Shown: positions 9,217 to 55,764 of the stretch, piece after piece | Numbering within the stretch: position 1 is the first letter of the stretch | Layout: each line of letters starts with the position of its first letter | Assembly: GCA_965649765.1 (NCBI GenBank) | Contig: OZ287751.1 | Span: 63,736,001-63,800,000 of the forward strand | Origin: Bispira polyomma | Lineage: Eukaryota | Reading direction: 5' to 3' | DNA length: 64,000 bases | Notes under the pieces: model-generated | Databases searched by the model: none | What the model was told of the DNA's origin: nothing | The model's input: only the letters and a program-made list of their open reading frames with translations | Position numbers and translations under genes: made by a program

Positions 9217-9762
9217 TTATTATTATTATTATTATAGATTTTTACCGCGCTTTATTGATGCTAGACATCTTCTAAAGCGCAACAGCAGAATCATTGGTCC
9301 AATCATTAAGTCCATGGACATTGCAAAGTCGTAAGGAGGGAAGTGGGAGCGTGCACGAGGAAAGCTAAGGTGGGTAGGCAAGATTAAAAAGATAGGTTTT
9401 AAGCTTTTTCCTAAAACCGATAAGTGTGTCAACTGATCTGAGGTCAACTGGGAGACTGTTCCATAACCGTGGAGCTGCAGTGGAGAACGCTCTGAAACCC
9501 GCCTTTCTGATTGGTCTGACAGAAGTGACAGAGAGTCTGTTGCCTCTCTTGCGGTTACTGAAGGAAAGAAGGGAGGCAAGGTAGGGGGGGGGCTGTTGAG
9601 TGACTACAGCCTTAAAAGTGGTAACGTGAATTTTATACAAAGTTCAAGAGTTAATGGGCAGCCAGTGTAATTTTTTGAGGTAAGGAGTGACGTCTGTGCG
9701 ACAACCAAGGCGAAAAATGACCCTACATAGGTAGTTTTGGATGGACTGGAGCTTTTTAATGT
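9217..9762 (-). mobile_element. L2-clade LINE 3' fragment (ORF2 C-terminus, 3' UTR, (AAT)n tail)
   Basis: Minus strand encodes LQSIQNYLCRVIF..PYLKKLHWLP..RAFSTAAPRLWNSLP..FRKKLKTYLF. Terminal stem-loop GCGCTTTA..TAAAGCGC; (AAT)n tail at 9217-9233. Confidence 0.9.
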
Positions 9763-19786: not shown

Positions 19787-20804
19787 ATCTCCAGTGTGTA
19801 AAAAGTATAAGAAAGAAAGTGTTTTCCTTTATTTCAAAAAAGTGCACTTTGTTCAGTAAAAAAGTATTTTTAAAGGTTTTGCTTGTAATCCATCGTAGAG
19901 TGCTGTCTTCCTAAATGCTCTACTATTATTCAGTGTGTCATTTCATTCCATCTTCACCAAATGACAACACATTAACTAGTTTGCTCCAATAATGGGAGGG
20001 CTTATTAAATAACCTACAAATAGAAATTTTGGTATATTTGTTTATATTTTATCTTTTACCAAATAGTTGTAAATTCAGTGGAATGTTTAGGTTATTTTCT
20101 ATTGTTCGTTCATAAGTAGAGGTATACAGAACTTTTGTCAGTTTGTGAACTTATTTGTCGCATAAATTAAAAAAAATTCCTGGTGAAAATGTACTCTATT
20201 ACAATATCCTATCAAGCTGATACTAGAAAAACTGAATCATATATGACTACACACTACAGTAAATTGTATTGGGAAAAAATTGTATTGCGATATATTTGAG
20301 ATATTACAGTTATATTCACAATACGTATTGCAATATATTGGATCTTAATACCTTTACAAGAATTATAGGGAGTTTTAAAGTCAAATGAGTTTCTGCCCAT
20401 GCACAAAAGCTTGCGCATAAATGATCTTGGAAGAAACTGTAAAATGTAAATGAACATTTGAGTAATATATTTAATCTATTAATTGTGAAGACTGCATTGC
20501 TTTATTTCTGATTCTGTTCTGACAAATGTCTTGCATGATCTCAGACTTTATTTCTAGACTACCAAGAAGTGGACGATATTCAATGCTTTTTTGAAAAAAT
20601 TATGTATCCAATACTTATTGTTTTTTCAATTTCGTATTGCAATATACTGTATTGTAAAAATATATTGGGATATATTGAGTTTTTAATATATTGTTGCTTC
20701 CTTAGTTGTAATGTTTTTAATTATTAGGATTTTTTTTTACATAAAGACAAATTTGTTTTGAGACATTTAAAATATCTGGTTTATAAGCTTATAATACAAT
20801 TCTC

Positions 20805-21275
20805 TCCATACCTCCAAAAGCTTGACTGACTTCCCATTCATTATCGTATTTTGTTTACAATTCATGTAACTGCTTTCAAAGCTTTTATCTCTCAAAAGCC
20901 CTTCTACCTTTCTGCTCGCATTGCCTTCAGTAACCTTGAAAAGGGGAAAGAGACGTTCTGTTTCCTCTGTTAAACCTACTAATAGGGTTGGATAAAAAGC
21001 TTTCTCTATTGCTGCTTCTATGTTATGGAAGTGTCTCCATGTTGAGCTTAGATCTGTTGAAAAACTTTCTGGTTTTAGGAAAAAGCTTAAAACCTATCTC
21101 TTCAAACTCACCTACCCTTCTTAGTTCTCTCCTCACACCCTCACATCCTTCCCAGCGATCTTAACTATGTTTTTGAACTTCTCTATTGGTTAACTGATTC
21201 TGTTGTTGCGCTTTAGAAGATGCCTTGCATCAATTTAGAAGATGCCTCTCCATCAATAAGGTGTGTTACAAATAA
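20805..21275 (+). mobile_element. L2-clade LINE 3' fragment
   Basis: Same family as 9217-9762 (..GFRKKLKTYLFKLTYP*; GTTGCGCTTTAGAAGATGCC). Confidence 0.85.
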
Positions 21276-30591: not shown

Positions 30592-31123
30592 AGTCTGTAA
30601 GTGCTAAGGCCACCACACCTTAAAAAAATTCATGTTCTTTTAAAATTGTAGTAACATTTTTCAGAAAGATTTCAACAAGGGGTTTCACCTGAGAAACTTT
30701 GTATAGAAAGAGACTTAATTTAGGTCTGATTCACAGAATATGTAAAAGGTAAGCGACAAGCCTTTTTTTTAGTAATTAAACACTATTTTACAGTGTATAT
30801 TTTACAAGTTAATCAGACAAATTTAGAGTTTTATTTTGGTCCAAAGATTTTCTTTTTGTATTGTGTTGTACATTTTTAACGAGCCTTATTGATGCTAGAC
30901 ATCTTCTAAGGCTCAACATCAGAATCAATAAACTGGTAGAAAAAACAAAATAATAGCCAGGTTGTCAGGAAGGATACGGGAGCGTCCAGGGAACGGCTAC
31001 GGAGGATAGACGAGCATGAAGAGATAGGTTTTAAGCTTTCTCCTATATCCAGAAAGTCTATAAAGCAAACTAAGCTTCCTGTAAGCAATCTTAGCTTGGT
31101 TATAAGTTCTTCTGAACACCACA
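30592..31123 (+). repeat. 532-bp direct repeat, left copy; contains an L2 3' end on the minus strand (~30870-31065)
   Basis: Ungapped match to 36363-36894 (offset 5771); 12 substitutions by my count. Confidence 0.97.
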
Positions 31124-31322
31124 GTGACTACAACAGTCGTTTAAGTTGTGAGTGAAATTGAAAATGTTGTACTGGCCTAGGGTGACCTCTAAAGGTCATA
31201 GATATTGAGGGTGAGGAATCAGATGCTGTTTGGGATAATTTTTATTCTAACTACTCGTCTCTATATCCAACTGTACAAGAAAATTATTTTCGATTAACAA
31301 TTTTTAAAATGCCAAAGCCAAA

Positions 31323-32302
31323 TTAGAAAGTAGAAGAGACGAGGAATGCGAAAGTTGTTGGAATAATTGTGGAAGCATGAGAGGTAGATTGAAGGTGAGA
31401 CCAAACAGCATCTGATTTCCAGCATCCATGTTTTTGAAAATGCTGAAGTTTAACGTTAGCATTAAATGCCAAGGAGGCTCCCGAGCGCCTGAAGCAATGG
31501 AAAGAATGCCCTTCTTTTGGGATATTCAACTGGGTTAAGATAGAGCTAAGGGTATGCCTTAAAGTCGAGTCTGAAAGGCACTGGCCTTTATGTAGTGGGT
31601 TTGCCAGTAATGGGTAAGAAGGGGGCAGAGGATATTTGCTAAATAGAGAAGTGGCTGCCTTCACAGGACAGAGCCATGGGTTTGAGAGTGCTGGTAGTTG
31701 TAGGATGTCTGGGTTTTTCCTGGTTTGGTTAGTCTTACTCCATTTTAATATGAGGTGAATGCCTGGGGGGGCAAACAACACGTCAGCCCTTGTTAGGTGT
31801 CTGGTAGGGTCAAAGGGGAGACCTGATGTGGTGGTCAGGTTAGAAATGCGTAAAAAACCAAATTAAGCAAACAGGAAAGCTGTTCTGAATAAGTCAGGAA
31901 ATGGAAACTGGTTAGAAGCTTGTGAAATTTGTTGTAATTGGTGCAAATCGAATACCCCTTTGACCCGAGGTGTGTATTTCGAAGTGAGTTCTAATGACCT
32001 CAAATATAATGGCAATCTAGGGTCATAAAGACCGGTTTGCTGAATGTTAAGAATTTTTGTGTTGTGCCTAATGGAAGATAAGTAATTACTCAATACTTTG
32101 TAAGAGACACCTGTTTGTGTCATAAATTCTAAAAAGGCTATAATGCTGTTAAAGCAAAAGGTTTCCCTTAAATCAAAATAAACTGTAAAGCTCAAAAAGA
32201 GTCTGAACTGGCTGTCATATTGCCTTTGTGTCCTAGGTCTGTGACTTTGTCTCAGTCGTCTCAAAGCTCCTTTGATCAGTGAGGAGGCTGAGTCAGAAGT
32301 AT
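31323..32302 (-). pseudogene. E1 tyrosine recombinase
   Basis: FGFLRISN, KWSKT, HCFRRSGA, HGCWKSDAVWSHL. In-frame stop at 31863-31865. The catalytic Tyr position reads His (VWTYI in E2). No ATG near the 5' end. Confidence 0.92.
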
Positions 32303-32308
32303 CTGAAA

Positions 32309-34807
32309 TTACACATAAGTATCTAAGGTAAAAAATTCAATGGGTATGTCATGCATGATGAAGTTGTGTACAAGTTCCTGTTTTATTGTATTGTCATAAT
32401 GGTCTAATTCAAACCACCTAGATAGAGCGTCTGCTATTATGTTGTCCTTGCCAGGTATATGTCTGATAGTCAAGTCAATATTCCTTAGGGCACAGATCTG
32501 CCAGATGTTCCTTAAACACAAACCTAAATAGTCGTCCCTGGTTCTGGATGACTGTACGACAGACACCACAGCCATGTTATCCGATTGTATCTTGATCTTT
32601 TTATTACTCCATTTGTGACCCCATAATTTGAAAGCTATGAGAATACTGACCATTTTGAAATGGACAATGGAAAGTGTTTGTTTAAGGAAGCATGGTAGAG
32701 GGGCTTTGAAAACCTCTAAACCAGAAATGCCACCGATTCCGGATAAACAAGCATCGACTTATAGTAACACGTCATGTGAACTATCCAGGTATGTGTACTT
32801 AGTTGTACCATTGAATTGTCTGAGAAAAGTTAAAAACCATTGTAAATCCTTATGAAACTCGCTTGTCAAAAGTACTGTTTTACTACTAGTAGATTGCCTT
32901 AATAAAGTTAACATTCTGTTCATAAATATCCGAGAATTCTTCACGCAGAGCTGTATGTATAATAACTTTCCCAGTAGTGACTGGTACTTCTGTTTACGTA
33001 CTTTATGCAAGTATTTAAATTCCATACAGATGTCAAATATGGAGTCTAATTTAGTTTGTTCAATACTGAGTGTTTCGAGATCTATGTCAATAGTGATGCC
33101 CATGCAAGTTACACGTTTACTAGGGGGAACTAGTTTCTTGGTATTAATAGGGAGGCCTAGGTCTGCTACGATTTCTTGTAAAGTAGTGTAAGCTAAGTCA
33201 GCCTTATCTTCAGTCTCAACGAGTATGAAATCGTCGATATAGTTGTAAACTATATATCCTTTCTGTCTTATAATATAAGTAATACAATCAGAAATCATCA
33301 TAAAGGCCACCGTGCCATGAGTGAGTCCAAAAGTTAGACTGAGATCAATGAAATAATTATTTTTCCAAAGGTAACCTAACTTCAAACAATCAAAAGGATC
33401 AATTCTTAAATTTCTAAACGCGTGCGCGATGTCCACTTTCGCTAAGGTGGCCTTAGTTCCTAACTCAACAATACGGGTAGTGATTTGATCAATGGTAGGT
33501 AACCTTAAATTAAACTCGACGTTATCATATTTATTTTTAATTGTACAATCATTTACAGATTGTCCCAGGGGGTGAGAAAGGTTAAGAACTAAATGACGCT
33601 GATCAATATCTTTAGGTACCGTTAATAAAGGTGAGCAATGTATATCCGGGTGAAGTTTTTCTAAAATAGGGCCCACTATGGTGCCCTTAGCTACTTCTGT
33701 AACGAAATACTTGTCAATGGCTTGTGGAAACGCCATAGCCGAATAATGGTTTTTGACATTTATGACCTTCAATCTGTCCCTCTCATACAGAGATATAGGA
33801 AACCCGAATTCTATATACTGTAAAACAATTTGATCCGGATAATCGACTAAGTATTTCTTCCAATTGAGAACATTGAGATCACTTTTAATGGGGAAACGCG
33901 CTTGTCTGTAGTTTGGCACCTTAATGGTTTTAATAATATCAGCTACTTCCAAAAACTTATCATAAGAAGTCAAGTCTACCTGTTGTCTGTCTGGTCCTAT
34001 GAAGTTAAAATGGTTTCTCCCTTGAGGGATGAAGCCATAAGTTCTTTGGTCAGTAGGTAAAATGTCCTCATTCACAAATTCTTCCCTTGTGGGCGAGTGC
34101 TGTATGTCATTGGTTTGTAATACAACGTCCTGTGGAATATCGGTTACTATGTGTGTGTCCTCAGTTATTGTATGGTTCCGTGAAAGGAACTTGTCATTCA
34201 CCCAAGCGTTTATATGCTTGTTGTATGTTGTTTGTGTGGTTTGTTTACAAATGTTGTCAATGATGGTAATATAATAATCAGAAGAACTGATGTTTGTACG
34301 GGTATGAGTAACCTTCTTAGGTTTTGGTAAAGGTTGAACCTTGCTATATGAAACAGTGTTTCTAACTAGAACAGGTACAGATAATGTGTGAACAAAACTG
34401 ATGGGCCACATTTTTTCTAGAGAGAGATCATGTTTATGAAGTGACCATTGACCTTGAAAGAAAACCCAAGTGTATACACCTGAAACACTGGGGTCAGCAT
34501 TACAAACAATATAATACACTGGGCCTTTTAGGCCATCATAACTGTGACTACTGTACAAGTCAACCAAAAAAGAGGTTGCAATAAAATTACTACTGCCATG
34601 AACTTTTGCTGGACAAAACTTGTGACCAATAGGATATGAAGCTGAATTTCTACTACACGAGACGTTATTTTGTCCATCTGTCGTGAATACATCACAAGAA
34701 CAATCATTTAAGAACTGTCCATGCCTAAAGCTCATACTGTTCATAAAAATGTTCCTTTGGTTGACTAACTCAGAATTTTGCTTATTATACTCATGTCTTA
34801 AGTTCAT
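32309..34807 (-). pseudogene. E1 pol (reverse transcriptase + RNase H)
   Basis: LAKVDIAHAFRNL, LTFG, YNYIDDF, CMGITID, SLLGKL. Frameshift near 32760, then VDACLSGIGG, SDNMAVV, HIPGKDNIIADALSR. Confidence 0.93.
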
Positions 34808-34912
34808 GCTCTCACAATGCTCCTGCTCTGGAATCTCGACATCCGAGGAGGAATTCGAGGAAGTTGAATTTGAAGATGAGCCGTTCGAAATTAAGGCCTG
34901 GGAATAGGACAG

Positions 34913-35970
34913 TCAGTTCATTGTCCACCTAGTTTCGTCTACCCAGCTGAGGCGCCCCTCTTCCACATCGTGCATGTTACATGCATACGAACCTCTGGCT
35001 ACCTGCCAGGAGATATTAGAAGCATCTTTTAAAGTATCTGCTAACTGGATTAACATGGCGCGAGAAATAGTAGGGTTTCTCACTTCTAAGATGTTCTGCA
35101 ACTGACCTGCAGCAAATTGTGACACAGTGAGCTCATCATAAGAAACTCGTTTCTTATTAATCCCAGATAAACATGCTTCATTAGGCCAACGTTTGATTGG
35201 GTCGGTAACACACACTTCAGATACATTGTACCGACCAGACTTGCGTTTAGTACTGAGCTTACCTTGAAGCGATTCATCAGCAGCCAATGCCTCGTAACGG
35301 GCTAACCGTTGTGAAACCTCGTTCTGTATCATAGAGGACTGCTTTAATACATCTGGAGTAGGCAGGATTGCATCATGTAGCGACCTATGAGCTTGGTCCT
35401 GAGTGTAACCCTCCCGTTGAGCGTTGTAACGTGTCGGGTACGTGTCATGGGAAATGTGAGGACGAAAATCGTTGACTCCTGTGTAATTCACTGCAGGGTC
35501 CTGGAACTGAGAGAAGCTCTGGGTAAATGGTAAAGAAGAACCTATGTTCTGTGTAAAAGGTGCTGAAGCTTAGGTGGAGCTGGCATCTGAGGCCTAATTG
35601 TCTGAGGTGTTGACGGGACCTGAGGGGAAAATGAACGAGATGTCTTTAAGCCGGATACGTCTTCCTGTAACATAGCTACCGTGGAAACTAGTGTTTTTAT
35701 CATAGACTGCTGCTCTGTGAAAATGTCTTTGTAAAACTGACCAGAACTCACGTGATCTTCAAAAAAGTGACTCGAGTCGGCGACGGAGTTGAGCGTGCTA
35801 GTTTCACCTCCCGCTCCATGAACTTCAGTAGAAAAGACTCTGCTGGCTTCTGCTTCTGACAACTCATCTTCGATGACTAGACGACACCTATTACCCACTG
35901 GTCAAGGGTGTGAAAAATTACAGCGTGAACACAAAGCTACAGTCACTTGCTTTCTCTTTCCTCGGCCCAT
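34913..35970 (-). pseudogene. E1 gag-like ORF
   Basis: ATG at 35970: MGRGKRKQVTVALCSRCNFSHP*PVGNRC. Frameshift near 35570. WPNE..SYDELTVSQF..WQVARG..EEGRLSW is homologous to E2 gag. Confidence 0.85.
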
Positions 35971-36362
35971 AACGAGATATCCAATTCAAAAAGCACACTA
36001 TAAGATGGTAGACGTTAAAACTGACTAAAATCACTAAACGTAAACGTGAAACAATGTCTAAAAAGTATAAAATAAGCTTGTTTCCATTTGCACAATCACT
36101 TATTTCCAATATGGCGGCTCTATTTGCCAATTCCAATGTGATTTCAAAGTGTTGCTACATTAACTTGCAACTTAATAATGACCAAATGTGGGAAAAGGCG
36201 GGAAATTGACTTAAACCTAAGGAATTTGATTGGTAGTGAAGTAAGAGAGGTTCTGGTCTAGGATTGGTGTATCTGGGTAAACAATTCTTAAGTAGGTAAA
36301 TAATACAGTAAGGTATTACAACTTCGCGACTGACTAGCCATGCTTTGCGAGCAGTGACTACA

Positions 36363-36894
36363 AGTCTGTAAGTGCTAAGGCCACCACACCTTAAAAAAAT
36401 TCATGTTCTTTTAAAATTGTAGTAACATTTTTCAGAAAGATTTCAACAAGGGGTTTCACCTGAGAAACTTTGTATAGAAAGAGACTTAATTTAGGTCTGA
36501 TTCACAGAATATGTAAAAGGTAAGCGACAAGCATTTTTTTTAGTAATTAAACACTATTTTACAGTGTATATTTTACAAGTTAATCAGACAAATTTAGAGT
36601 TTTATTTTGGTCCAAAGATTTTCTTATTGTATTGTATTATACATTTTTAACGCGCCTTATTGATGCTAGACAACTTCTAAGGCGCAACATCAGAATCAAT
36701 AAACTGGTAGAAAAAACAAAATAATAGTCAGGTTGTCAGGAAGGATACGGGAGCGTCCAGGGAATGACTACGGAGGATAGACGAGCATGAAGAGATAGGT
36801 TTTAAGCTTTCTCCTATATCCAGAAAGTCTATAAAGCAAACTAAGTTTCCTGTAAGCAATCTTAGCTTGGTTATAAGTTTTTCTGAACACCACA
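36363..36894 (+). repeat. 532-bp direct repeat, right copy
   Basis: Matches 30592-31123 without gaps. Confidence 0.97.
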
Positions 36895-37909
36895 TGTGCT
36901 GAACTTATTCACTAATGAGCTGGCTTAACTTTATAAGGCTATATGATGACCCTTCATAAGGATGGTAGATTAAACCATAGCAACAGGCTGTTAACAGCAA
37001 TGCTAGACACCAAAGATTCAGTTCATTCTCATTATATTGTATTGTGGATCTGTATGCACCTTATTGATGCTAGACAGCTTCTAAATTGAAGCATCAGTAT
37101 AAATAAATCATTTACAATGATAGATAACCGATTTTTTGTCACCATTAGGTAATGGCATGTTCATATCTTGCCCAGGGATGTTCTGCCCCAACGATCATTA
37201 TGGTGTTATCAGAAGATGAACAGGGGACAAAGGAAAAGTTTCACTCTTGGTTGATTTCATGCTATGACACAAAACTATAATACCTAAAATTTACAGCTTT
37301 TTCCTGTATGGATTGAATGCCTAGACTAATCAGAAGAGATTTTACAACTAACAATTATGGTGGCACAGCGTAATGTGTTTTTATGTTAATCATGCTACTC
37401 GCCTGAAAATCTTCTAATCAGAGTGTCTACGTTGCAACCACAAGCCAAATAAATCCAATTTTCTTTTTTCTAATTCGGAGACAAAATATCATTACAAAGT
37501 AAATATAACTCATAATTAACTACTGAACTTTAATCCCGATATTATCTGTCAAATAAGGGCTAAGAAGCTGTATTTAGAGAAAGCTAGACTTTTTACCAGC
37601 ATTTTTACCTCATTACAGCATTAACAACATCTCAGACTTACTTATACTGCATTTGCTTCCTCAATTATATGACTAATGGATACTCCCCACTGTCATTATT
37701 TTGGTAGACTATTTTCAGTGGCTGTATTCAAAGGTCTTAGTCTGAGTTAAGGTGTAATGTCGAGACGTTTAGATAGGTATAGTTATATTGCATTGGCATT
37801 AAAAAGCAGTAAAGTTTAACTTATGGCCAAAATAAAGGGTTGATACAAAGCTAAATGGTTGTCATTTATATATAAGGCTAAAGATGGAACTTAAGAGATT
37901 GTCAGTCAA

Positions 37910-37949: not shown

Positions 37950-38409
37950 TTTTTATAGTATCTGTTTCATAATAACTATATGGACAACATAAGATTCTAG
38001 CAAAATTTGTTGTAAAGAGAAGGTGAAAAGCAGTATGTTTATATTCTAGTGGTATGATGCATGAATAAGTTAGACTTTAAATTTAACAAAGCTGTAGTGA
38101 TGCAACTCTTATGTTACACCATCAAAGTTAGAGGTCCTGATTTATTATGGCCTTAAAACCCTGGACAGCCGTAAATAGCCCTCACTGACCCTGGCAAACT
38201 GTCAGAGTCACTGTCGCAAACTTAAGAACAACCCTTAAAACTATATTGTCACAGATTAGTTTTCCTCATTAAGGACATTATTTTCACTGTTTTCTCAAAT
38301 CTGGTGCTTCCTTTGCTTTCAATAACAATATTAAACCTCAAAACATTTAGAAACAGGGTTGTTGGAAATATGATGCATTTTGGACTTATTTAGAATTTAT
38401 CTCTCACAT

Positions 38410-38530
38410 AATAATAATAATGCATTTTTAACACGCTTTATTGATGCCAGGCATCTTCTAAAGCGCAACAGCAGAATCAGTGATCCAATCGTAAAGTCCA
38501 TGGGCATAGCAAGGTTGTAAGGGTAGGGGG
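38410..38530 (-). mobile_element. L2 3' UTR fragment
   Basis: CGCTTTATTGATGCCAGGCATCTTCTAAAGCGCAACAGCAGAATCA is nearly identical to 9247-9293. Confidence 0.8.
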
Positions 38531-39164: not shown

Positions 39165-39445
39165 GGCTGGATCTAGAGCTTTTTTCAATTGTTGACCTCA
39201 TATAATAGAATACCCTCCAAGTTCAGCTTAGATCACTGGACACATTAATCACTAGAAACACTTTTTGGGTTTAGGCAAAACCTTAAAATTTATCTCTTAA
39301 AACTTGCTCAAGCGCCTTCATTCTCTTCCCCTAAGCACCCCCACTTCATACCTTACACCCTTGGCTATGTTTGTTTGGACTTTTCCCGATTGGTTGATTC
39401 ATTCTGTTGTTGCGCTTTAGAAGATGCCTCCTATCAAAAATGTAA
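39165..39445 (+). mobile_element. L2 3' fragment
   Basis: GGGCTGGATCTAGAGCTTT..GCTTAGATC..GTTGCGCTTTAGAAGATGCC. Confidence 0.75.
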
Positions 39446-43135: not shown

Positions 43136-43427
43136 CTAACTATACAGGAGTGTTTTTTTAATTAAAGAATTATTGTAGAAATTTCAAAAGAAATACAATA
43201 TTTTATGTTGAAAAAGTAAACACACCTTATTTACTTCTTTGAAACTTGTGTCCAGTAAGGCGTCATAGATAACCTAATTAAAGTAGGTCAAATCGCTAAA
43301 TAAAATGGTTACTACTAAAGCCCGGAATGTCACTCGCAACCAGAATAGACCAGCAAAATACCCTTACAAAAAGCGGCTTTCAACTCCGTCCGACCTCCTT
43401 TATTAAAGGCTATTCTTGTTATACATT
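43136..43427 (+). repeat. Uninterrupted paralog of the repeat split by E2
   Basis: Left part aligns with ~45615-45768 and right part with 51295-51447, joined at CTAATTA|AAGTAGGTCAAATCGCT. Confidence 0.85.
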
Positions 43428-44681: not shown

Positions 44682-44902
44682 GTTTATGTTATTTGTCGCA
44701 TTTAACACGTGTGTGGGCCATATTATACCATACAGGTCACTGTTGGAAGAAATCAGAACAGGGCAATTGGTCAAAATGTTCTCGCATACACCACCAACAA
44801 AACTACTGCCAAGTATCCAACAATACACGCCAAGACTGAGATTTAAACCCATAACAAAAAAGGTGGCATGTCGGTGTCTTACCACTACACTACTGAGGCC
44901 CC
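44682..44902 (-). mobile_element. tRNA-derived SINE, family D
   Basis: rc head GGGGCCTCAGTAGTGTAGTGGTAAGACACC..GGTTTAAATCTC; relative at 59979-60208. Confidence 0.7.
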
Positions 44903-45007
44903 ACCAAATGGGTAACTTACCACTTACAAATGCCGGAACTGAGATTCATACCCAAAACAGAGACGAGGCAACTGTGTTACCACTGCACCACTGAGGCCCC
45001 ACTATAT

Positions 45008-45337
45008 GAAATTAAATGAAATAGGACATTTGTTATAGCACACCAATACAACACAGGGTCGTTTTAAATGTGCTTCCTTAAAGGGCAGCCACTATGGACG
45101 TCCCTGAGGATGACCATTTATCAACCTCACCAAGGATCTTTAATCTGCCACTGGAGATATTACTCAGTGACAGAGGACCGCCATTTTAAGTGGTCATCCA
45201 AGCCACTAGGCAAACTAGTGTTCGCATCTTGCCCAAGGATGTTATCCTACGAAATGAAACTAGTGGCTGGTACCGGGAATAGAACCGGGGACATTCTGAT
45301 CATCAGACCAACACTCTAACCACTAGACCACGGGGGA
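45008..45337 (-). mobile_element. tRNA-derived SINE, family C, full length
   Basis: rc A box TGGTCTAGTGG and B box GGTTCTATTCCC; body matches 14658-14916. Confidence 0.85.
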
Positions 45338-46199
45338 TCACAACTTATATAGATATGGTAACTTACACATGCAAGGACTCAGAATTGAACCCACAATAAG
45401 AGGGGAGTATGTTACCACTAACCCACTGAGATTTCTTTTTTCATATTATAACATAGTGTCTTATTAGTTCAGAGGGCAAGGACTGAGATTCGAACCCACA
45501 AGAACAGAAAGGTGAGCGTGACCACTACACCACTGAGACCCTCTTTTTAGGTCAGAGACGTTCTAACGTGATTGGTAGCTGGGGGCCACCATGTTGTATG
45601 ACGAGTCTAAGATAAACTGTGTAGGGGGTGTAGATTTATTGCTAATATTCGTAAAAAACATATATCTTCTTTTATCATGGAAAAATGCAAGAATTGACTG
45701 ATGTAGAAATACACCTTTTTAATTCTGGGATTCTTGTGTCTGGTAAAACATCAAAACTGACTTAATTAGCAGTCCCCAACACTCCCAAGCCAATAATAAA
45801 TTCAATGAGGGTACATAATTTATTATATAAATTGTATAAAATATATAAAATACACTTCTAATCTACTGACTATTTACATTTCTTAATATGTTACGTAATA
45901 CATTAATGAATACAATGTGTAAAATTCTAAAAGTAAAGGTCATCTTGAGCAAAATAAGTTTAAGTTTTAACTTAAGTTACACATGAATGATTTATCAGTT
46001 TAAGATTATCCTTAAGCAATACTTTAAGGTTGTCCTAACCTGAGGGCCACTAAGGTTAACATACGTCATAATTTAAGGTGACCCTAATCTGAGGGGCCTA
46101 AATAATTTCCAGATAAAGTTCAAGTTGACCTAAACTTGTTTTAACATGTTTTAAGATACATCAGATCAAGCCTCAAACCCAAACGTAGGGTAATGACAT

Positions 46200-47197
46200 T
46201 TATACAGCATTAAGTAGGCGCTGGAAAGTTGCAGCCACTTCTGTTGAGCCATTATTGCTCTGAATATACGTCCATACACAATCCGACTTCCAGGTGCCAT
46301 GCTCCTTGATTTGCTGTATAGGTACATCTGCTTTATAAGCTAGAGTGGCACCTGAACGTCGAAATGCATGGAATGTATAATAATTAGATGGATAATCCAA
46401 TTTATTGTTAAGTAGTGCCAATGTTTTCCTAACTCTTGAATCCGTAGCCACCTGCCAGCCCTGAGCCATCTTGCACTGGAACAATGGATCTTTTTTACCA
46501 GGATTGTAAAGATGAAATAACTTTCTTAAGGCTGTATATGGACAAATGGTAGAAGAACCTAATCGTGGCAATGTCAAAATTTGCACCTTGTCCCTAGTTT
46601 GCATAGTCTTTGTCCATTTTAACTATATTTTGACTGTGTGCTTCTGAAAGAACACATCTGCACCAGTTAAGTGCCTGGTGTGATCAAATTCCCTGATTGC
46701 ATGTGGTGCGATATTTGAGAGTCTCAAAAAGCCAAAGTATCCTGTTAAAAAAATAGCCTTGTATACGTACGAATTGCTTATATAATTGCATTGAGCTACC
46801 AATCTTTCAAGTGTGGGCACATCCATGATATTTCTCTTAACTATAGTATGAGTTCTATTAATCTTTAATGACTTGATAAAGTATTTTATCTTCGGGTGAT
46901 CAAAGATTACAAATTGTAAATCATATACAATACACATGGCTTTAATAGCTGCAACGTAGTTTGCCACCATATGAACTGAAACTTTATTGATAACCAGAAA
47001 CTCTAGAAATGACATAATACCATTTATATTTAAACATTCCAGTGCTATATTAACACAAAGGCAAAAAGCCACAAAAGTTCTAAATAAACCTTGGTAGCAA
47101 AGCCTGGTCTTTGGTCGAAAGGCAGTGTGTAATCTCTTGCTAGCTTTTATCTGTAGCTTTTGCACTGCTCCAAGCTCTACAACACAAAGCATAGTAT
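46200..47197 (-). pseudogene. E2 tyrosine recombinase
   Basis: YFGFLRLSN, KWTKT, HAFRRSGA, HGTW, VWTYI (catalytic R-K-HxxR-H-Y present). One in-frame TAG at 46623-46625. Confidence 0.93.
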
Positions 47198-47203
47198 CTG
47201 TTA

Positions 47204-49791
47204 TTAAAGTGTATTATCAATGTCTGTCAATTCTAAAGACGTTTTAACCATACTGGGTTTTCCACCAATGTGTTCAATTCTTGTACATTATCAATTGTAT
47301 ATTTCCAACGTGACAATAGATCAGCGATTCTGTTGTCTCTTCCCATGACATGTATATATTGGAGCTCAATGTCTGCTACTGCAGCCATATACCATATATT
47401 TGTCGCACATGCTGAGAGATAAGGGTCTCTGGCCCTGCCAGATTGCAATACATTCCCAACTGCATTGTTATCACATTTAATAAGGACCTTACTACCTGTC
47501 CAGTATTTTTGGTATAACTTTAAGGCTACTAGTATGTTAATCATCTCAAGATGAACTATGCCAAGATTTTGAAAATTTGTTGGTATTGGAAGATGATATA
47601 CAAGACTTCTCCATCTTCCTCCCAGGCCATAAAGGCAGGCGTCTAATTTCAATGTTTGATCAATGCTTTTATGTCCATACATGTATACACCATTGTATAG
47701 CGGCAAGAATCTATCGAACCATCTCAGATCCCGTTTGAACTCTTCTGTTAAAATGACCTTGTTTGGATTTGAAATACCTCTTAACAATTCCAACATCCTA
47801 TTTAGGAAACACCTCGCAGGTTTGACGCATTTGTGAATGTATAACAATTGACCTAACAAAGATTGCAAATGTTTTTTGGTACATTGTTTTTTATTTTGCC
47901 ATTGACTGACCGTAGTTCTAATTTGCTGTAATTTCTCGTCTGGTATGGTCATTGTGCCTTTTACAGTGTCAATTAGTACTCCTAGGCACACTGCTTGTGT
48001 GCTAGGAGACACTAACTTTTTCTGACTGATTGTAAGTCCTAACTTTTCCATGATTTTATACAAGCACTGAAATGAGCCTTTTGCTGAGGTGGGCGTACCT
48101 TAACCAAGGAAATCATCAAAATAGTTGATGACGCTATGGCCACGTAGACGCATGATGTAACGCACGGCGTCACTGACGCGTTGGAAGAATTGGCTGCCGT
48201 GACGGCTCCCAAAGGGGAGACACGTGTCTACATAAGTACCTTGCCAATTGAGTCCTAACAAGTCATAATCAATGGGATCAATTTTTAAATGGTGAAACGC
48301 GCGACTTACGTCCAACTTATAGATGTGAGCGCCTTTTCCCAATTTGGTAACTTCTTTAGTAAGATTGTCAATAGTGGGGAAGCTGAGCTTAAAATCTGCC
48401 CCTAAATAGCTATCTTTTTCTACCCCATCATTTACTGAATAACCTATAGGCCAACTCAAGTCTATAATTACTCGCCTGTTATCTGAATTAGGCTTGTGCC
48501 TAGTCATGAACGGTGAATGATGGCCGTTTACAATTGGGTTTTGTTTGAAGGGTCCTATTATCGCCCCGTGACTTTTTTCCTCATCAGTGTAAATCTGGAC
48601 ATCATTGGGATATTCTATTGCTGACTTATGATTGTCCACATCACACCTGAGTTCACATTTCCGATTAAAACCTAAGGGAAACCCAAACTCAATGAGCTGA
48701 AGTAATTGCTGATCCCAATAGTCCCTCAACATAACCTTCCATTGTTCTGTGTTTAATTGAGATGTCACTTGTATTCGAGCCCCCATGAAATTTGGTTGCC
48801 CCTTTTCTTTGACTTTCTGATGTAACTTAATTGGGCATTGAATGGTTGTGTTTGTAAAGCTGCTACCACTTGGTAGTGTTTGCTCAGTGATTGGAATAAA
48901 TCCAAATTGAAACTCTGATTGTTTTGTAAACTTAGTGAAGCTGTCACAAATGCCACTGATTTGTTTTGCTTTGACACCTTTATTGTGAAACAATATTGAG
49001 TTAATGAATTTATCGTCCTGAATGCTATTTACATCAAACAATAGTTTTGTTTTGGCCGGGCTATTATCATCATGCGCCACTTTGTTCACTTTTGTGGGGG
49101 AAATCCCCCTTTGTGATTGTTGCTTGTTGTGTTTACACCTTTCCTGGAAGAGAGTAAGTTTTTGTGTTGTGACACTACTAACCGCATTGTTTGATTTTGC
49201 GTTGAGTGTTTTGACACCCTGTGGTTGTATTTGGTGTTTGCTTACTTTACATCAAAAACCCACACTATTTTGCCTAGCTTTAACCGCACTGGCATAAGAT
49301 CTGATTTTGACGTCATAACTGACGGCCCGATATGTGCACATGACACTTTGCAACGGACGAACGAGTAAACTTTCTATGTCACTTTTTCTCACTTCTTTGC
49401 TATAAAAAAATCTGCCAACATAACTTGTGTCACGCTGTTTACATTTAAAACCAGCAAGGTACTTTGCCTGCTTTGTACTGACATTTGTATCAATAGTATT
49501 TACACATTCAGTATTACTAACACTAGAACCATTTGTTTTTCCATTCACACTAAAAACATTGACAACCTCTCTGTTTTTGTTTACCTGTGACTGACTGGCC
49601 TTACTACTAAACCAGCTGCCTTCCAGTTTAGCAAATATGTCTGTGGAGTTTGCCCCCAATCTCGTGATCTTTGATTTGTTGACAAGCACCAGTCTGGTAA
49701 AATTTACAGAACCATGGTTTTTTGTTACTGTCAGATTTCGGCCAATTTTTTGTCCCTCCAAAATTATTATGGCTGGTGTGCTTTTGTGCAT
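47204..49791 (-). pseudogene. E2 pol (RT + RNase H), 5' end overlapping gag
   Basis: RVIIDLS, YKLDVSRAF, LPFG, INYFDDF, in-frame TAA at 48100-48102, LDACLYGLGG, CDNNAV, HVMGRDNRIADLLSR. 5' boundary approximate. Confidence 0.92.
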
Positions 49792-50692
49792 GAGCCCTGC
49801 GAATATGGTCTATTCTATTTGTGTCATCCCAGGTAAGGGAGCCCCTCTCCATCTCACACAGGAGTACTGCGTGAGCAGCCTTAGCCCCCTGCCACGTAAA
49901 ATCCGTGGCGTCCTCCATTAAATCAGACATATATGCGATCATTTTATCTTTCTTACCTCTATCAGATTCCTCACTTATGTTTTTGCAAAAACCTTGTACC
50001 CATTGGGACATTGACAACTGATCATAGGACAATCGAGTTCTTGTTGCCCCCCCTAATATTGATTCTTGAGGCCACGCTACTTTTTGTTTTACCACAACTT
50101 CCACTGGACAACCCCTTTTTGACTTAATTTTATTTACATTCTCAGTACCTGAATTTCTGCTGTCCTTCTCCAGTTACCTTAATCTGGAGTCAACTCTACG
50201 TTGGAAAGATGCCGAGGCCCTTAATGTAGCCAAACTAGGGAGTACTTGTTCCTCGTCAGAGGATTCACTATCAGATGTACTATCACTGCTATTCTGGTTA
50301 TTACATTGAACATTAGTTTTTTGACGAATTTTGCTTAACCTCCGCCCACCACTTTTAAGCACGTCCTTCTGTCGGCTGTTGCTGGATTCCGCTACCTGCT
50401 CCTCTACTACATCAAGACGAGAGTTCACCCGCTGTAGTTCCCTCAATATCTGCAACTGGACGCTATCCTGGACACTATCCCGCACTGCACTGCGTCCCTC
50501 AGCTCTTGCACTATGACTTTGCTGCCCATTTTCGCTAACATTAGTGTCCAACACTGTATGGGCTTCCAACACCGCCGTGTCATTATTATTGAATTTTTCA
50601 GTCAATCTTACACCACGTGTGCCCTTTTTTCCAGTTGGTGGAATGTGTTTTTCCTCACACTTTCTACACAGCGCCTTTGATTGTTTAGGCAT
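49628..50692 (-). pseudogene. E2 gag-like ORF
   Basis: MPKQSKALCRKCEEKHIPPTG. In-frame TAA at 50174-50176. WPQE..SYDQLSMSQW..WQGAKA; C-terminal CKFYQTGAC..H..HIC zinc finger. Confidence 0.88.
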
Positions 50693-52212
50693 ATTTCCGA
50701 ATGTTTACTGTTTATGCTATTATTGTTCTTATATCAGTTTCTGAAAGTAAGAAAATATACACAGGCCCCCAGCTCTCCCTTCTCACAGCACCATGACTTG
50801 GTTTAACTCGACGAATTTGACTATAAAGCAAGAATGATAAGTTAGGTTAGACCATCCCTTAATTCCGACCTAAAAAGGTCAAACCAAGCATGAGGCTGTC
50901 AGAATGAGCGATCTGTAAACACTGAGAGAGAAACGTTGTCAAATCCACACAATGTCTGTTGTAGATAACTAAAAACACTAAAATAAGTCCTTGTAGTATA
51001 ACACGTAAAACATTAAATAAAACAGTTTGTAAAAAAAAACTTGAAGAAAGTATTTTAGTTTTCTGCCACACTTGTCTGTGGCCAAATTCAAACTGACTTA
51101 TTATTAGGTGAAAAACCCTGCTGTTTATGGCTACAGCCAATGAGATTGATTGTTTGACATTTACTTAGCAACATGGGGGTTTGTTTACTTGTTTAGCCAT
51201 TAAGCAATTTTTACCTGTGTATTAGCCTGATACCCTCACTGAGTTTAAGGTCGTGTAGGACTGACAAGGGCAATGCCTTAACACTGCCCCCGAAAAGTAA
51301 GTCAAATCGCTAATCAAAATGGTAACTACTTAAGCCCGAAGTTTCACTCGGAACTGGAATACACCTACAAAAGTGATAATATTCTTACATAAAGTGGCCT
51401 TTAACTCCCTCCGAACTGCCTTAAAAAAAGCTCTTCTTGTTCATATTATCACACAGTGTCTTAGGTCAAAGTATTAACCTAATGCTTTTTGACTATTTGA
51501 GTAGAATTTTCAATCTTGTGAGAAAAATGACCTTGTGGGCAATGTGAAGTGTAAAGTGATGTCATGTGACCCTTTGATGGATGGCCAGTGTCAACAGTCA
51601 AACCACTTAAAAAGAAAGCCCCAACTAATGTCATATCATGTGTCTTTATGTCACCTAAATAAAAGACTAGTTGGATCACATCGGAGTTGACTTAGCTTTT
51701 AAAGAGAAATATCAACAAAAAACATACTGGAATTCACCTAGCTTTTAAAGAAGAGTTTTAACAATAAACAACAAGATAAGTAAAAGTTTTTCATCACAAG
51801 TTTAAGTAATATAAACACGTTATATAGATATATTCTGTAACATTTTCCCAGTTTGTGTTGCAGCAGCAAACATTATGAAACAAAATCGAAGTTTTCTTTT
51901 TGTGTTAAGATTAGATTTTGTTAATTTGGTGGAAAGTTTGTGCACGTGTTAAATATTGTTCATCAGTTCATTTGTTTCATTAACTTAGAACTCTACTTAT
52001 TTTCTGTATTTTGCTGTCTACATATTCTGTAAATTGAGGAATTTTATTTTTAACTAGACATTGTTAAGAGTTTAAGTGACTTTGAGTTCTCCTAGAGAGA
52101 AGATTTTGCATGGCCTAAACGGACTAGATTGCATTACATTAGATAAATATGCCAAATTATTGAATGTAATGTAAAATTTGGATAATCTAGATACAAGTAC
52201 CACCATGTGGGT

Positions 52213-54109: not shown

Positions 54110-54380
54110 CCCTTACTTTGCTGCTTGCTTTTCCTTCAGCAACTTTAAGAGAGAAAAGAGACTTTCTGTTTCCTCTGCTAAATCTACCAAGAGGGCTGGA
54201 TCTAGAGCTTTCTTGGGTGCTGCTTCAATGTTATGAAATAATCACCCCGTTGAGCTTAGATCGCTTAAAACACTTTCTGTGTTTAGGAGAAAAATCTAAA
54301 CCTGTATCTTCATACTTTCTTACCGTCAACTCCTTCCCTGTACACCCCTACATCCTTCTTTACGACCCTGACTATGTGTT
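54110..54380 (+). mobile_element. L2 3' fragment
   Basis: Aligns with ~20910-21170. Confidence 0.75.
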
Positions 54381-55764
54381 TTTTCACCCAAAAAAATTAC
54401 CTTTCTAATTATAATCAAAGTTTACATAATTGCAAAATCCATTTGATGGTTGAAGATCGAATGGGCCGGTGAAATACACAGAAGTAAACCTTTAGTGGTA
54501 CATTAGTTTTGCATAAAAGATAAAAAACGTCTGGCTTCAGGGTCAGGGAGCGAAATAATATAGATAAACCTGGCCATATTTGTGGGAGCTTTTGTGGAAT
54601 TGTCTTTTCAAAACATAATTCCTATGAAATGTGTAACACAGAGAAATATATTTTATTGGCTTCACGGAGGCATAAATGGGTAATAGTCCAACAAAAAACC
54701 TTGTTGGTGACATGGAACCCTAGACTAAGTAAAATATAGACAGTCCACATTCTGGACAAAGATATACCAAGAAAAAGACTGCCAAAAGAGTGGCTTTATT
54801 ATAAATTGTATCACAGAGTGATGTTTACTGCTTAAAGAACCAAAGAGACTAATACCTATGTCTCATATAGAGGAACCAGCGATACAAAGACACTACAAGC
54901 GTTTTTGTGATCTATCAGTGAGTATGCGTTTTAACTTTGTTATAGATTCACATGCATTCCGGGCGTTTCGTTGATATCTTTTTGGGGATGTTCAAAATAT
55001 GTGTGTCAGACAGTTCGTTTATGAGTGGTTTTGTGGGGGAGAGGGGATGGGAGAGCGGTCAGATGGTCATTTATTGATGTAAAAATAGCCTATAGCATGG
55101 CTACTAAGTATTGCAAGCATTATGAACATAAATAAATTAATCTTGATCACTGACTGATTTTTCAATTTCATCTATTTTTATCCACTTTGCTGGTATGCAG
55201 TTAAAACCTCCACCCCAACATTATTGCAAATCTTCTGTGTCAGCAATCATCTGTTCCCATCTGTAAAACTGATCTGGACAAGTTTCAGATATGTGTATTT
55301 CCCCTAGATTAAACAGTAGATTGTAACAAGGTACAGCACCTTCTGCTACCTTCTGCTCATACTGTAGGCTTGATAACATACAGTCGATACAACTGTTGGT
55401 GTGATTAACCTCTTCACTCTAATTTTCCACAGCACATTTAAACAAAAAACTATAATCAAGATTTGCCTATTATATTCAATATGATGATATAGGCTCACAT
55501 TTTCCAAAGCAAAGCCAACTCAAATTGAAAATCAAGTCAATGGCTGAAGTGTTTGTGTAACTTCTCTGTATAGAGATAAACTATACTTGTGACCATTCAT
55601 TTTACAAGACCTTTCGGTACTAAATTTAAATGTGTAGTCAGATGTTATGTAACGTCACTCTAGCCAGAGATGTGTAGGTATTAATAAGCTACAGTCCATT
55701 CAAAACTACCTATGCAGGGTGATTTTTCACCTAGGCGGTAGCACAGACATCACTCCTTGCCTAA

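What the first reader, a model, noticed from the sequence alone, without database searches (positions are those of the whole stretch)
36318..36363. Minimal terminal architecture: no long ITR/ICR or split repeats, but a conserved 36-nt end motif and an offset short inverted repeat
Established: DIRS1-type elements have ITRs plus an ICR, and Ngaro/PAT elements have split direct repeats. Seen: I find neither here. The right ends (element 5') share a 36-nt motif: E1 GACTGACTAGCCATGCTTTGCGAGCAGTGACTACAA (36328-36363) and E2 GACTGACAAGGGCAATGCCTTAACACTGCCCCCGAA (51259-51294). Each left end starts with CAGTC, complementary to that GACTG. The pairing extends: E1 CAGTCGTTTAAGTTGT (31134-31149) with ACAACTTCGCGACTG (36318-36332); E2 TAAATTCAATGAGGGTA (45797-45813) with TACCCTCACTGAGTTTA (51231-51247, 15/17). 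Inference: the 3' end pairs ~31 nt inside the 5' end, a panhandle with an overhang that could guide priming or circularisation. This may define a distinct YR-retrotransposon subgroup.
Basis: partly seen in the sequence, partly recalled or inferred. Interest (0 to 1): 0.8.

Follow-up and report, generated by a model that had tools for sequence, protein, structure and literature searches.

The report
Ngaro retrotransposons missing their tail repeats
The two elements are ordinary Ngaro-type tyrosine-recombinase retrotransposons whose copies in this window have lost the tail repeats that most sister copies in the genome still carry.

Summary
The quoted strings and both element ends are correct, apart from E2 ending at 51293 rather than 51294. 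Dozens of other copies in the same genome stop at the same bases. Most E1-family copies (22 of 29) and the full E2-family copies have the Ngaro layout A1-ORFs-B1-A2-spacer-B2. In the E1 family A is 224 nt, B 184 nt and the spacer 577 nt. In the E2 family they are 248, 438 and about 270 nt. Both window copies lack the A2-spacer-B2 tail. E1 keeps only 12 nt of A2 and sits between two copies of a 532-nt host duplication.

The inverted repeat is not chance. It belongs to a hairpin across the B|A junction. The last bases of B (GACUG) pair 31 nt inside A, the first 30 nt of A fold on themselves, and an outer stem closes the structure. Both families fold this way (z = -4.0 and -7.75). The sense strand is the more stable in 24 of 24 junctions, and diverged subfamilies show compensatory changes. 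Its function is untested.

The scan reached the same tail-loss reading on another window (s1-632729).

The parts
31134..36363 (-). E1: Ngaro-type YR retrotransposon copy with layout A1-ORFs-B1. Its ORFs are broken and the A2-spacer-B2 tail is missing.
   Evidence: RT Pfam hit; RH and weak YR hits; termini shared with 29 other genomic copies.
36140..36363 (-). E1 repeat A1 (224 nt, the element's 5' end).
   Evidence: In 22 other copies the same 224 nt recur as A2 directly outside B1.
31134..31314 (-). E1 repeat B1 (181-184 nt, directly after the YR stop codon).
   Evidence: It recurs as B2 at the outer 3' terminus of full copies.
31122..31133 (-). 12-nt remnant of A2 (CAGTGACTACAA on the + strand), making a B1|A2 junction. 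The rest of the tail is absent.
   Evidence: Identical to 36352-36363. In full copies the same junction...GACTACAA|CAGTCG..., is followed by all of A2.
30592..31123 (.). Left copy of the 532-nt host duplication flanking E1.
   Evidence: 97.7% identical to 36363-36894. No other copy of the family has this sequence next to it.
36363..36894 (.). Right copy of the 532-nt host duplication flanking E1.
36318..36332 (-). E1 A-side arm of the inverted repeat (helices P1 and P2 of the junction hairpin).
   Evidence: Pairs with 31134-31149 as 7 + 7 bp around a 2x1 internal loop.
36333..36363 (-). First 31 nt of A. They fold into their own 10-bp hairpin (P3) between the junction and the A-side arm.
   Evidence: MFE fold of the junction, z = -4.0. 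The same fold appears in 21 family junctions.
31134..31149 (-). E1 B-side arm (the 3'-terminal 16 nt of B).
32759..34807 (-). E1 ORF with the reverse transcriptase domain.
   Evidence: PF00078, E = 5e-8.
32309..32653 (-). E1 RNase H-like piece.
   Evidence: PF13456, E = 7.6e-5.
31323..32264 (-). E1 tyrosine recombinase, split into two ORF pieces in this copy.
   Evidence: PF00589, E = 0.038 here. Sister copies have an intact 337-aa ORF with R..K..HxxR..W..Y and PF00589 at E = 2.7e-4.
45770..51293 (-). E2: a second, diverged Ngaro-type copy with layout A1-ORFs-B1. It is unit-length with no tail, and its ORFs are fragmented.
   Evidence: RT, RH and YR-SAM hits; termini shared with genomic copies.
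51046..51293 (-). E2 repeat A1 (248 nt).
   Evidence: It recurs as A2 abutting B1 in full copies L061, L062 and L083.
45770..46177 (-). E2 repeat B1 (about 438 nt in the family).
   Evidence: B2 and B1 self-match at 97.5-98.4% in L061 and L062.
51231..51263 (-). E2 A-side arms: the outer stem (51231-51247) and the inner GACTG (51259-51263).
45770..45813 (-). E2 B-side arms: the inner CAGTC (45770-45774) and the outer stem (45797-45813).

Best explanation
E1 and E2 belong to two diverged families of ordinary Ngaro-type tyrosine-recombinase retrotransposons. The genes run gag-like, RT, RNase H, YR on one strand, with no methyltransferase.

The transposing form in this genome has classic split direct repeats, A1-ORFs-B1-A2-spacer-B2. 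Both window copies lack the A2-spacer-B2 tail. E2 is a unit-length A-ORFs-B derivative, most simply produced by recombination between B1 and B2. E1 keeps the B1|A2 junction plus 12 nt of A2 and is bracketed by a 532-nt host duplication. That pattern points to an aberrant insertion that did not use the recombinase, of a molecule slightly longer than one unit.

The 3'-terminal GACUG of B pairs with CAGUC at A +32 to +36. A nt 2-30 form their own stem-loop. An outer stem of 7 to 18 bp closes the whole structure. In a unit-length strand this geometry places B's 3' end directly next to A's 5' end.

Inferred, not shown: the hairpin is the cis-acting junction element. It would be the direct-repeat counterpart of the DIRS-1 circle junction/ICR, used on the sense RNA or sense single-stranded DNA to join or copy across the ends, or to present the recombination site.
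For: Domains: RT, RH, and an intact 337-aa YR ORF in sister copies with the R-K-HxxR-W-Y residues. Only about 150 nt separate RH from YR.

Split repeats: 22 of 29 E1-family left ends read [B2 184 nt][C 577 nt][A2 224 nt][B1...], with unrelated flanks outside B2. E2-family copies L061 and L062 read [B2 438][C about 270][A2 248][B1].

No target-site duplication in 19 paired ends.

Tail-less copies are scattered among full copies in the tree. The reciprocal solo A-C-B units exist, at least 8 among the top hits.

The literature gives the same layout and comparable repeat sizes for Ngaro (A 236 bp, B 152 bp in Xenopus DIRS-53_XT; PMC9210276). It also reports isolated AB solos (PMC8547959) and a short spacer between A2 and B2 in VIPER/SIRE (PMC6681497).

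Hairpin: junction folds give z = -4.0 (E1 family) and -7.75 (E2 family). The sense strand is the more stable in 24/24 junctions, by 16-20 kcal/mol in the E2 family, which has 5-9 G-U pairs. Across 15 diverged junctions, 96.8% of cells are paired against 41-54% for slid controls. Three pairs show compensatory changes, and the covariation score is 0.100 against 0.061 for shuffles (0/500 reach it).
Against: No reference Ngaro, PAT or DIRS proteins were available, so placement in Ngaro rests on architecture and not on a tree.

A spacer of 270-577 nt between A2 and B2 is longer than any I could document in the literature.

I cannot tell recombination after insertion from direct integration of unit-length circles as the origin of the tail-less copies.

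The covariation is modest: 3 pairs and 8 cells, from related sequences. The whole junction-proximal region is conserved, so conservation alone does not single out the pairing.

No RNA data were available, so neither the transcript ends nor the strand that folds is shown.

The E1 insertion mechanism is inferred from a single case.
Confidence: 0.88

Rival explanations
1. One reading: these elements form a distinct YR-retrotransposon subgroup that truly lacks ITR/ICR and split repeats, and relies only on a short end motif and an offset inverted repeat.
For: Both window copies lack a tail. 7 of 29 E1-family copies and about 8 of 11 paired E2-family copies are also unit-length.
Against: Full copies of both families carry B1-A2-spacer-B2 with diverse flanks, so the tail transposes with the element. 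E1's nearest relative, L032, is a full copy, and short copies are interspersed with full ones in the tree. E1 itself still holds 12 nt of A2.
Confidence: 0.03
2. The tail-less A-ORFs-B copies and the solo A-spacer-B units are primary integration products. A circle carrying two B|A junctions is resolved by the recombinase into two smaller circles, and each integrates on its own. On this view they are not deletions after insertion.
For: Both reciprocal products exist. Short copies end exactly at the canonical termini and have no target duplication. Their scattered tree positions fit either model.
Against: Short forms are commoner in the family with the longer B (438 nt against 184 nt), as expected for homologous recombination between B1 and B2. 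No permuted A-spacer-B-A-ORFs-B copies appeared among 29 right ends. There is no direct evidence for circles.
Confidence: 0.25
3. The junction palindrome acts as double-stranded DNA, as inverted binding sites for the tyrosine recombinase (a lox/att-like site), and not as a folded RNA or single strand.
For: Tyrosine-recombinase sites are typically inverted repeats around the crossover point. The junction lies inside the palindrome. Flanks after the A end start with CA, the first bases of B, in 12 of 29 copies, which suggests a short homology at the crossover.
Against: Invariant G-U pairs and a sense strand more stable than the antisense by 16-20 kcal/mol in the E2 family are not expected for a duplex binding site. 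The arms are 30-31 nt and more apart, far wider than the 6-8 bp cores of known sites. Compensatory changes preserve pairing and not sequence.
Confidence: 0.2
4. The inverted repeats are chance matches in AT-rich non-coding DNA.
For: The arms are short and interrupted.
Against: Shuffle tests, fold z-scores, conservation across subfamilies that differ by about 25% in B, and compensatory changes.
Confidence: 0.02

Closest known systems
Ngaro retrotransposons (for example DrNgaro1; Xenopus DIRS-53_XT with A 236 bp and B 152 bp; PMC9210276, PMC8547959)
   Same: The gene order is gag-like, RT/RH, YR on one strand, with no methyltransferase. The split direct repeats are A1 at the 5' end and B1-A2-B2 downstream of YR, with similar repeat sizes. 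There is no target-site duplication. Copies that have lost part or all of the repeats are common, and isolated AB units occur.
   Different: A conserved non-coding spacer of 577 nt (E1 family) or about 270 nt (E2 family) lies between A2 and B2. I found no published description of the B|A junction hairpin in the searchable library. Phylogenetic placement was not tested.
VIPER and its derivative SIRE in trypanosomatids (PMC6681497)
   Same: The layout is A1...B1-A2-B2, with an 'exclusive' internal sequence between the A2 and B2 parts. The A2-spacer-B2 block also occurs as a free-standing short element, comparable to the solo A-C-B units found here.
   Different: The VIPER spacer is about 30 bp, against 270-577 nt here. 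VIPER has a different gene order and is restricted to kinetoplastids.
DIRS-1 internal complementary region / circle junction (Cappello 1985 model; tested in PMC7192593)
   Same: An internal sequence holds the two element ends joined together, and it is thought to let incomplete transcripts regenerate full ends. B1|A2 is the direct-repeat equivalent. The self-complementarity of the junction is also shared.
   Different: DIRS-1 has inverted terminal repeats, and its ICR is complementary to both ends. Here the repeats are direct, no ITR or ICR exists, and the complementarity is a local hairpin between the end of B and the start of A.
PAT-like elements
   Same: Split direct repeats and a tyrosine recombinase.
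   Different: PAT-like elements carry a methyltransferase domain (PMC4157794). Here only about 150 nt separate RH from YR.

Membership tests
Ngaro-like YR retrotransposons | Encodes a tyrosine recombinase with the catalytic R-K-H-R-[H/W]-Y residues | tested here: met
   An intact 337-aa ORF in sister copies (L046:1707-2717:-) shows GFLRISNL, KWSKT, HCFRRSGAS and HGCWKSDAVWSY. PF00589 covers profile positions 4-160 of 172 at E = 2.7e-4, which is below Pfam's gathering score. In the window copy the ORF is split.
Ngaro-like YR retrotransposons | Reverse transcriptase and RNase H upstream of YR on the same strand | tested here: met
   PF00078 in 32759-34807 and in 48100-49089. PF13456 in 32309-32653 and in 47233-48063. 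All lie on the minus strand, upstream of the YR pieces.
Ngaro-like YR retrotransposons | No methyltransferase domain between RH and YR | tested here: met
   About 150 nt separate the end of the RH match from the start of the YR ORF in E1. In E2, RH is followed directly by the YR SAM-like domain. Caveat: I know of no Pfam model for the DIRS methyltransferase, so the test rests on available space and not on a model.
Ngaro-like YR retrotransposons | Split direct repeats: A1 at the 5' end and B1-A2-B2 downstream of YR | tested here: met
   Met at family level: 22 of 29 E1-family copies, and L061, L062 and L083 of the E2 family. It is not met by the two window copies themselves. A spacer lies between A2 and B2.
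Ngaro-like YR retrotransposons | Integration without target-site duplication | tested here: met
   None in 19 paired ends. E1 in the window is the exception, with a 532-nt duplication.
Ngaro-like YR retrotransposons | RT and YR cluster with Ngaro reference sequences in a phylogeny | not tested
The large protein searches were not spent on this question.
DIRS1-like | Inverted terminal repeats plus an internal complementary region | tested here: not met
   The repeat scan of 30000-52500 found no terminal inverted repeats beyond the short arms described here. Full copies have direct repeats and not inverted ones.
PAT-like | Methyltransferase domain together with split direct repeats | tested here: not met
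   Split repeats are present, but there is no room for a methyltransferase between RH and YR.

The most novel reading that the evidence does not exclude
The conserved sense-strand hairpin that sets B's 3'-terminal GACUG against A +32 to +36, with A nt 2-30 folded as its own stem-loop, is the functional end-joining element of Ngaro retrotransposons. It would hold the 3' end of one unit next to the 5' end, so that reverse transcriptase can switch templates, or the ends can be sealed or recombined exactly at B|A. E1, which is a unit plus 12 nt of A2 inside a 532-nt host duplication, would then be a captured replication intermediate that shows where such molecules end.
Probability: 0.3. Interest if true: 0.55.

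Novelty: new member of a known kind. Interest (0 to 1): 0.3.

Why it matters
The practical lesson is that single copies of YR retrotransposons are unreliable guides to terminal architecture. Tail loss is frequent, so any claim of a new subgroup needs ends checked genome-wide. That check removes the claimed novelty here.

What remains useful is a concrete, testable cis-element. A hairpin across the B|A junction is conserved and covaries in two diverged Ngaro families. Nobody has shown how elements with split direct repeats prime reverse transcription, rebuild their ends or present a recombination site. A defined structure at the junction gives a target for mutagenesis in a retrotransposition assay.

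Tried and rejected
1. I searched for RNA sequencing runs to map transcript starts and ends. No RNA holder is on record, only contig-level runs of unknown kind. I therefore did not use read laying.

2. MAFFT could not align the E1-family and E2-family junctions in register. The cross-family comparison is therefore structural and descriptive. The formal covariation counts use E2-superfamily junctions only.

3. Within the E1 family the paired positions hardly vary. The few changes are transitions at CpG sites or at unpaired positions, so they say nothing for or against pairing.

4. I first thought that CASTG 12 nt before the junction might be a conserved half-site. Most E1-family copies read CAATG there, so I dropped the idea.

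5. I folded the whole A2-B2 spacer. There is no significant excess structure (z = +1.47 for the E2 family and -1.45 for the E1 family). A local element such as the one in s1-680826 was not examined.

6. A phmmer search of the YR ORF against PDB sequences gave nothing useful.

7. A literature search for a described Ngaro junction hairpin found none in the held library. The original Ngaro paper is not in that library, so this is weak evidence of novelty.

8. I did not run the large protein searches, because the domain calls were not in doubt.

Full report
**What is in the window**

The quoted strings are at the stated coordinates. Both elements lie on the minus strand.

- E1 (31134-36363) has an RT domain in 32759-34807 and an RNase H-like piece in 32309-32653. 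A tyrosine recombinase is split over 31323-32264.
- E2 (45770-51293) has RT, RH and a YR SAM-like domain in separate ORF fragments.
- Both copies are therefore dead. The window is 36.9% G+C.

A repeat scan and a self-BLAST showed two things this note had missed.

- The last 12 nt of E1's right end (CAGTGACTACAA, 36352-36363) recur immediately outside its left end (31122-31133).
- E1 is bracketed by a 532-nt direct repeat (30592-31123 = 36363-36894, 97.7% identical).
- The same reader logged the 532-nt duplication in a separate note, s1-686169.

**Genome-wide ends, E1 family**

I searched the window's own genome (1.04 Gb, 75 contigs) with 500-nt probes across each end.

- All 29 other right ends stop at ...GACTACAA, the equivalent of 36363. 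What follows is unrelated in each copy.
- At the left end, 22 of 29 copies do not stop at CAGTCG. In window orientation they read [copy of 31134-31314, 184 nt][577 nt absent from E1][copy of 36140-36363, 224 nt][CAGTCG...].
- In these copies the outermost CAGTCG abuts unrelated flanks.
- In the element's own orientation this is A1-ORFs-B1-A2-C-B2. That is the split-direct-repeat layout that defines Ngaro, PAT and VIPER elements (PMC9210276, PMC4157794, PMC8547959, PMC6681497).
- The spacer C is non-coding and is conserved in every full copy at 86-94% identity.
- The other seven copies end exactly at B1.

**Genome-wide ends, E2 family**

The same layout holds.

- Full copies read [B2 438 nt][C about 270 nt][A2 248 nt][B1...].
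- The A end is ...CCCCCGA, so E2 ends at 51293 and not 51294.
- Most paired E2-family copies are unit-length, as E2 is. This follows from the spacing of end coordinates.

It is met for both elements.

**Nature of the tail-less copies**

- A tree of the 1.87 kb shared by all left-end loci places the eight short E1-family copies among full copies, in at least five separate positions. E1's nearest relative, L032, is a full copy. The short form is therefore a recurrent derivative and not a lineage.
- The reciprocal product, a free-standing A-C-B unit of about 985 nt, also exists at eight or more loci. It resembles the isolated AB repeats of Cafeteria Ngaros (PMC8547959) and SIRE of VIPER (PMC6681497).
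- None of 19 paired ends shows a target-site duplication, as expected for integration by a tyrosine recombinase.
- Short forms are commoner in the family with the longer B. This fits recombination between B1 and B2, but I cannot exclude direct integration of unit-length circles.
- E1 itself is different. It keeps the B1|A2 junction and 12 nt of A2, then runs into the duplicated host segment. That suggests a molecule slightly longer than one unit was captured without the recombinase. This is an inference from one case.

**Classification**

- Sister copies carry an intact 337-aa YR ORF ending about 10 nt before B1. It has the R, K, HxxR, W and Y residues, and PF00589 covers nearly the whole profile.
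- Only about 150 nt separate RH from YR, which leaves no room for the methyltransferase of DIRS1 and PAT elements.
- There are no inverted terminal repeats and no ICR.
- By architecture the elements are Ngaro-like.
- The one departure I can document is the long A2-B2 spacer. VIPER has about 30 bp at that position (PMC6681497).

**The inverted repeat**

- The best duplex between the start of B and A beats 1000 dinucleotide shuffles. For E1, 0/1000 shuffles of A and 23/1000 shuffles of B do as well. For E2 the counts are 15/1000 and 10/1000.
- Folding true B1|A2 junctions in the sense orientation shows that the pairing is one helix of a larger hairpin common to both families.
- P1 is an outer stem, 7 bp in the E1 family and up to 18 bp in the E2 family.
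- P2 pairs the 3'-terminal GACUG of B with CAGUC at A +32 to +36.
- P3 is a stem-loop of 10-12 bp formed by A nt 2-30 alone.
- The junction lies between P2 and P3. In a unit-length strand, B's 3' end would therefore sit directly beside A's 5' end.
- The z-scores are -4.0 (E1 family) and -7.75 (E2 family).
- The sense strand is the more stable in 24 of 24 junctions. The margin is 16-20 kcal/mol in the E2 family, whose fold contains 5-9 G-U pairs. This points to a sense RNA or sense single-stranded DNA, and not to duplex DNA.

For covariation I fetched 12 further, more diverged junctions (80-88% identity). Two other fetched loci, L104 and L106, gave no usable junction. I aligned the 12 new junctions with the three already in hand, 15 in all.

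- RNAalifold recovered P1-P3 with 33 pairs. Three of them keep pairing through changes on both sides: UA to GC, AU to UA and GC to UA.
- In pair counting, 96.8% of cells are paired, against 41-54% for slid controls.
- The covariation score is 0.100, against 0.061 +/- 0.007 for shuffles, and 0 of 500 shuffles reach it.
- Further concerted changes in the distal part of P1 are visible by eye but are lost to indels in the alignment. Examples are GAGUUUA/UAAACUC against GAUUA/UAAUC, and the G-C against A-U split noted.
- The support is real but modest. The sequences are related, P2 never varies, and the whole junction-proximal region is conserved.

**The 36-nt motif**

It has 13/36 ungapped identities and about 23 with gaps. 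It scores far above any other 36-mer of E2's 5' region. The conserved parts are the 3' arms of P3 and P2 (GCAUKGC ... GUCAGUC in sense).

**Mechanism**

Shown: the architecture, the termini, the absence of target duplications, and the conserved junction hairpin.

Inferred: the hairpin is the cis-acting junction element. It would do for a direct-repeat element what the ICR/circle junction does for DIRS-1. In DIRS-1 the ICR is essential, and the intermediates are mostly linear single-stranded cDNA (PMC7192593). It could let reverse transcriptase cross from the 5' end of the template to the adjacent 3' end, let the ends be sealed, or present a folded recombination site.

Flanks after the A end begin with CA, the first two bases of B, in 12 of 29 copies. 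This hints at a short homology at the crossover. None of these functions has been tested, and no RNA data were available.

**Relation to earlier notes of the scan**

- s1-632729 described the same features on another window: a 5' hairpin, a short asymmetric inverted repeat, ends T...ACTG and no TSD. Its follow-up reached the same verdict, ordinary Ngaro elements that lost their tail. I reached this independently from this window's families.
- s1-680826 reports a conserved RNA rod in the A2-B2 spacer. My whole-spacer folds showed no excess structure, but I did not look for a local element.

**Verdict**

The claimed new terminal architecture is an artefact of reading two tail-less copies. The families are new members of a known kind. 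The junction hairpin is a worthwhile, modestly novel detail.

Noticed in passing
window 30592-31133 and 36352-36894: E1 is bracketed by a 532-nt host duplication (97.7% identical) and ends with the B1|A2 junction plus exactly 12 nt of A2. The joints show microhomology (CA on the left, A on the right). No other copy of the family has this flank or any target duplication. It looks like a molecule slightly longer than one unit, captured without the recombinase.
   Followed up: partly
G000:C2:79230947-79231929, C5:17343136-17344135, C7:13667957-13668947 and at least five more: These are free-standing A-C-B units of about 985 nt from the E1 family, with no internal region. They are the counterpart of solo LTRs, of the isolated AB repeats of Cafeteria Ngaros and of SIRE in VIPER.
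   Followed up: partly
L032:1279-1288 (minus strand) and L061:810-819: In both families the A2-B2 spacer starts, in sense orientation, with the same CCCACCCACC motif directly after A2. The rest of the spacers share no detectable similarity. The complementary strand is purine-rich, so it could be a priming tract.
   Followed up: no
G000:C10:43638560-43638911 and 43643752-43644103 (L023, L022): Two E1-family 5' ends lie 5192 nt apart with identical flanking sequence. This suggests a tandem or segmental duplication of an element together with its flank.
   Followed up: no
window 51294-51441 and 43280-43420: E2's right flank is 76-82% identical to a stretch 2.3 kb to the left of E2's left end. It is probably a dispersed repeat and not a target duplication. 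I did not check copy number.
   Followed up: no
window 30866-31076, 36635-36828, 37026-37107, 38408-38522, 39248-39440, 9222-9437, 20801-21234, 54114-54385: A short dispersed repeat family (MITE- or SINE-like, about 70-86% identity, in both orientations) occurs many times in the window, including inside the duplicated host segment that flanks E1.
   Followed up: no
window 44829-45537: A cluster of about 100-nt repeats with tRNA-like box motifs (GAGATTCGAACCC...) lies just to the left of E2. They look like SINE copies.
   Followed up: no
L038 and L012 (G000:C7, about 2.03-2.04 Mb): The first 16 nt of the right flank of this full copy recur 122-137 nt upstream of its left end (E = 6e-4). This may be chance, or a trace of a rearranged target.
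   Followed up: no
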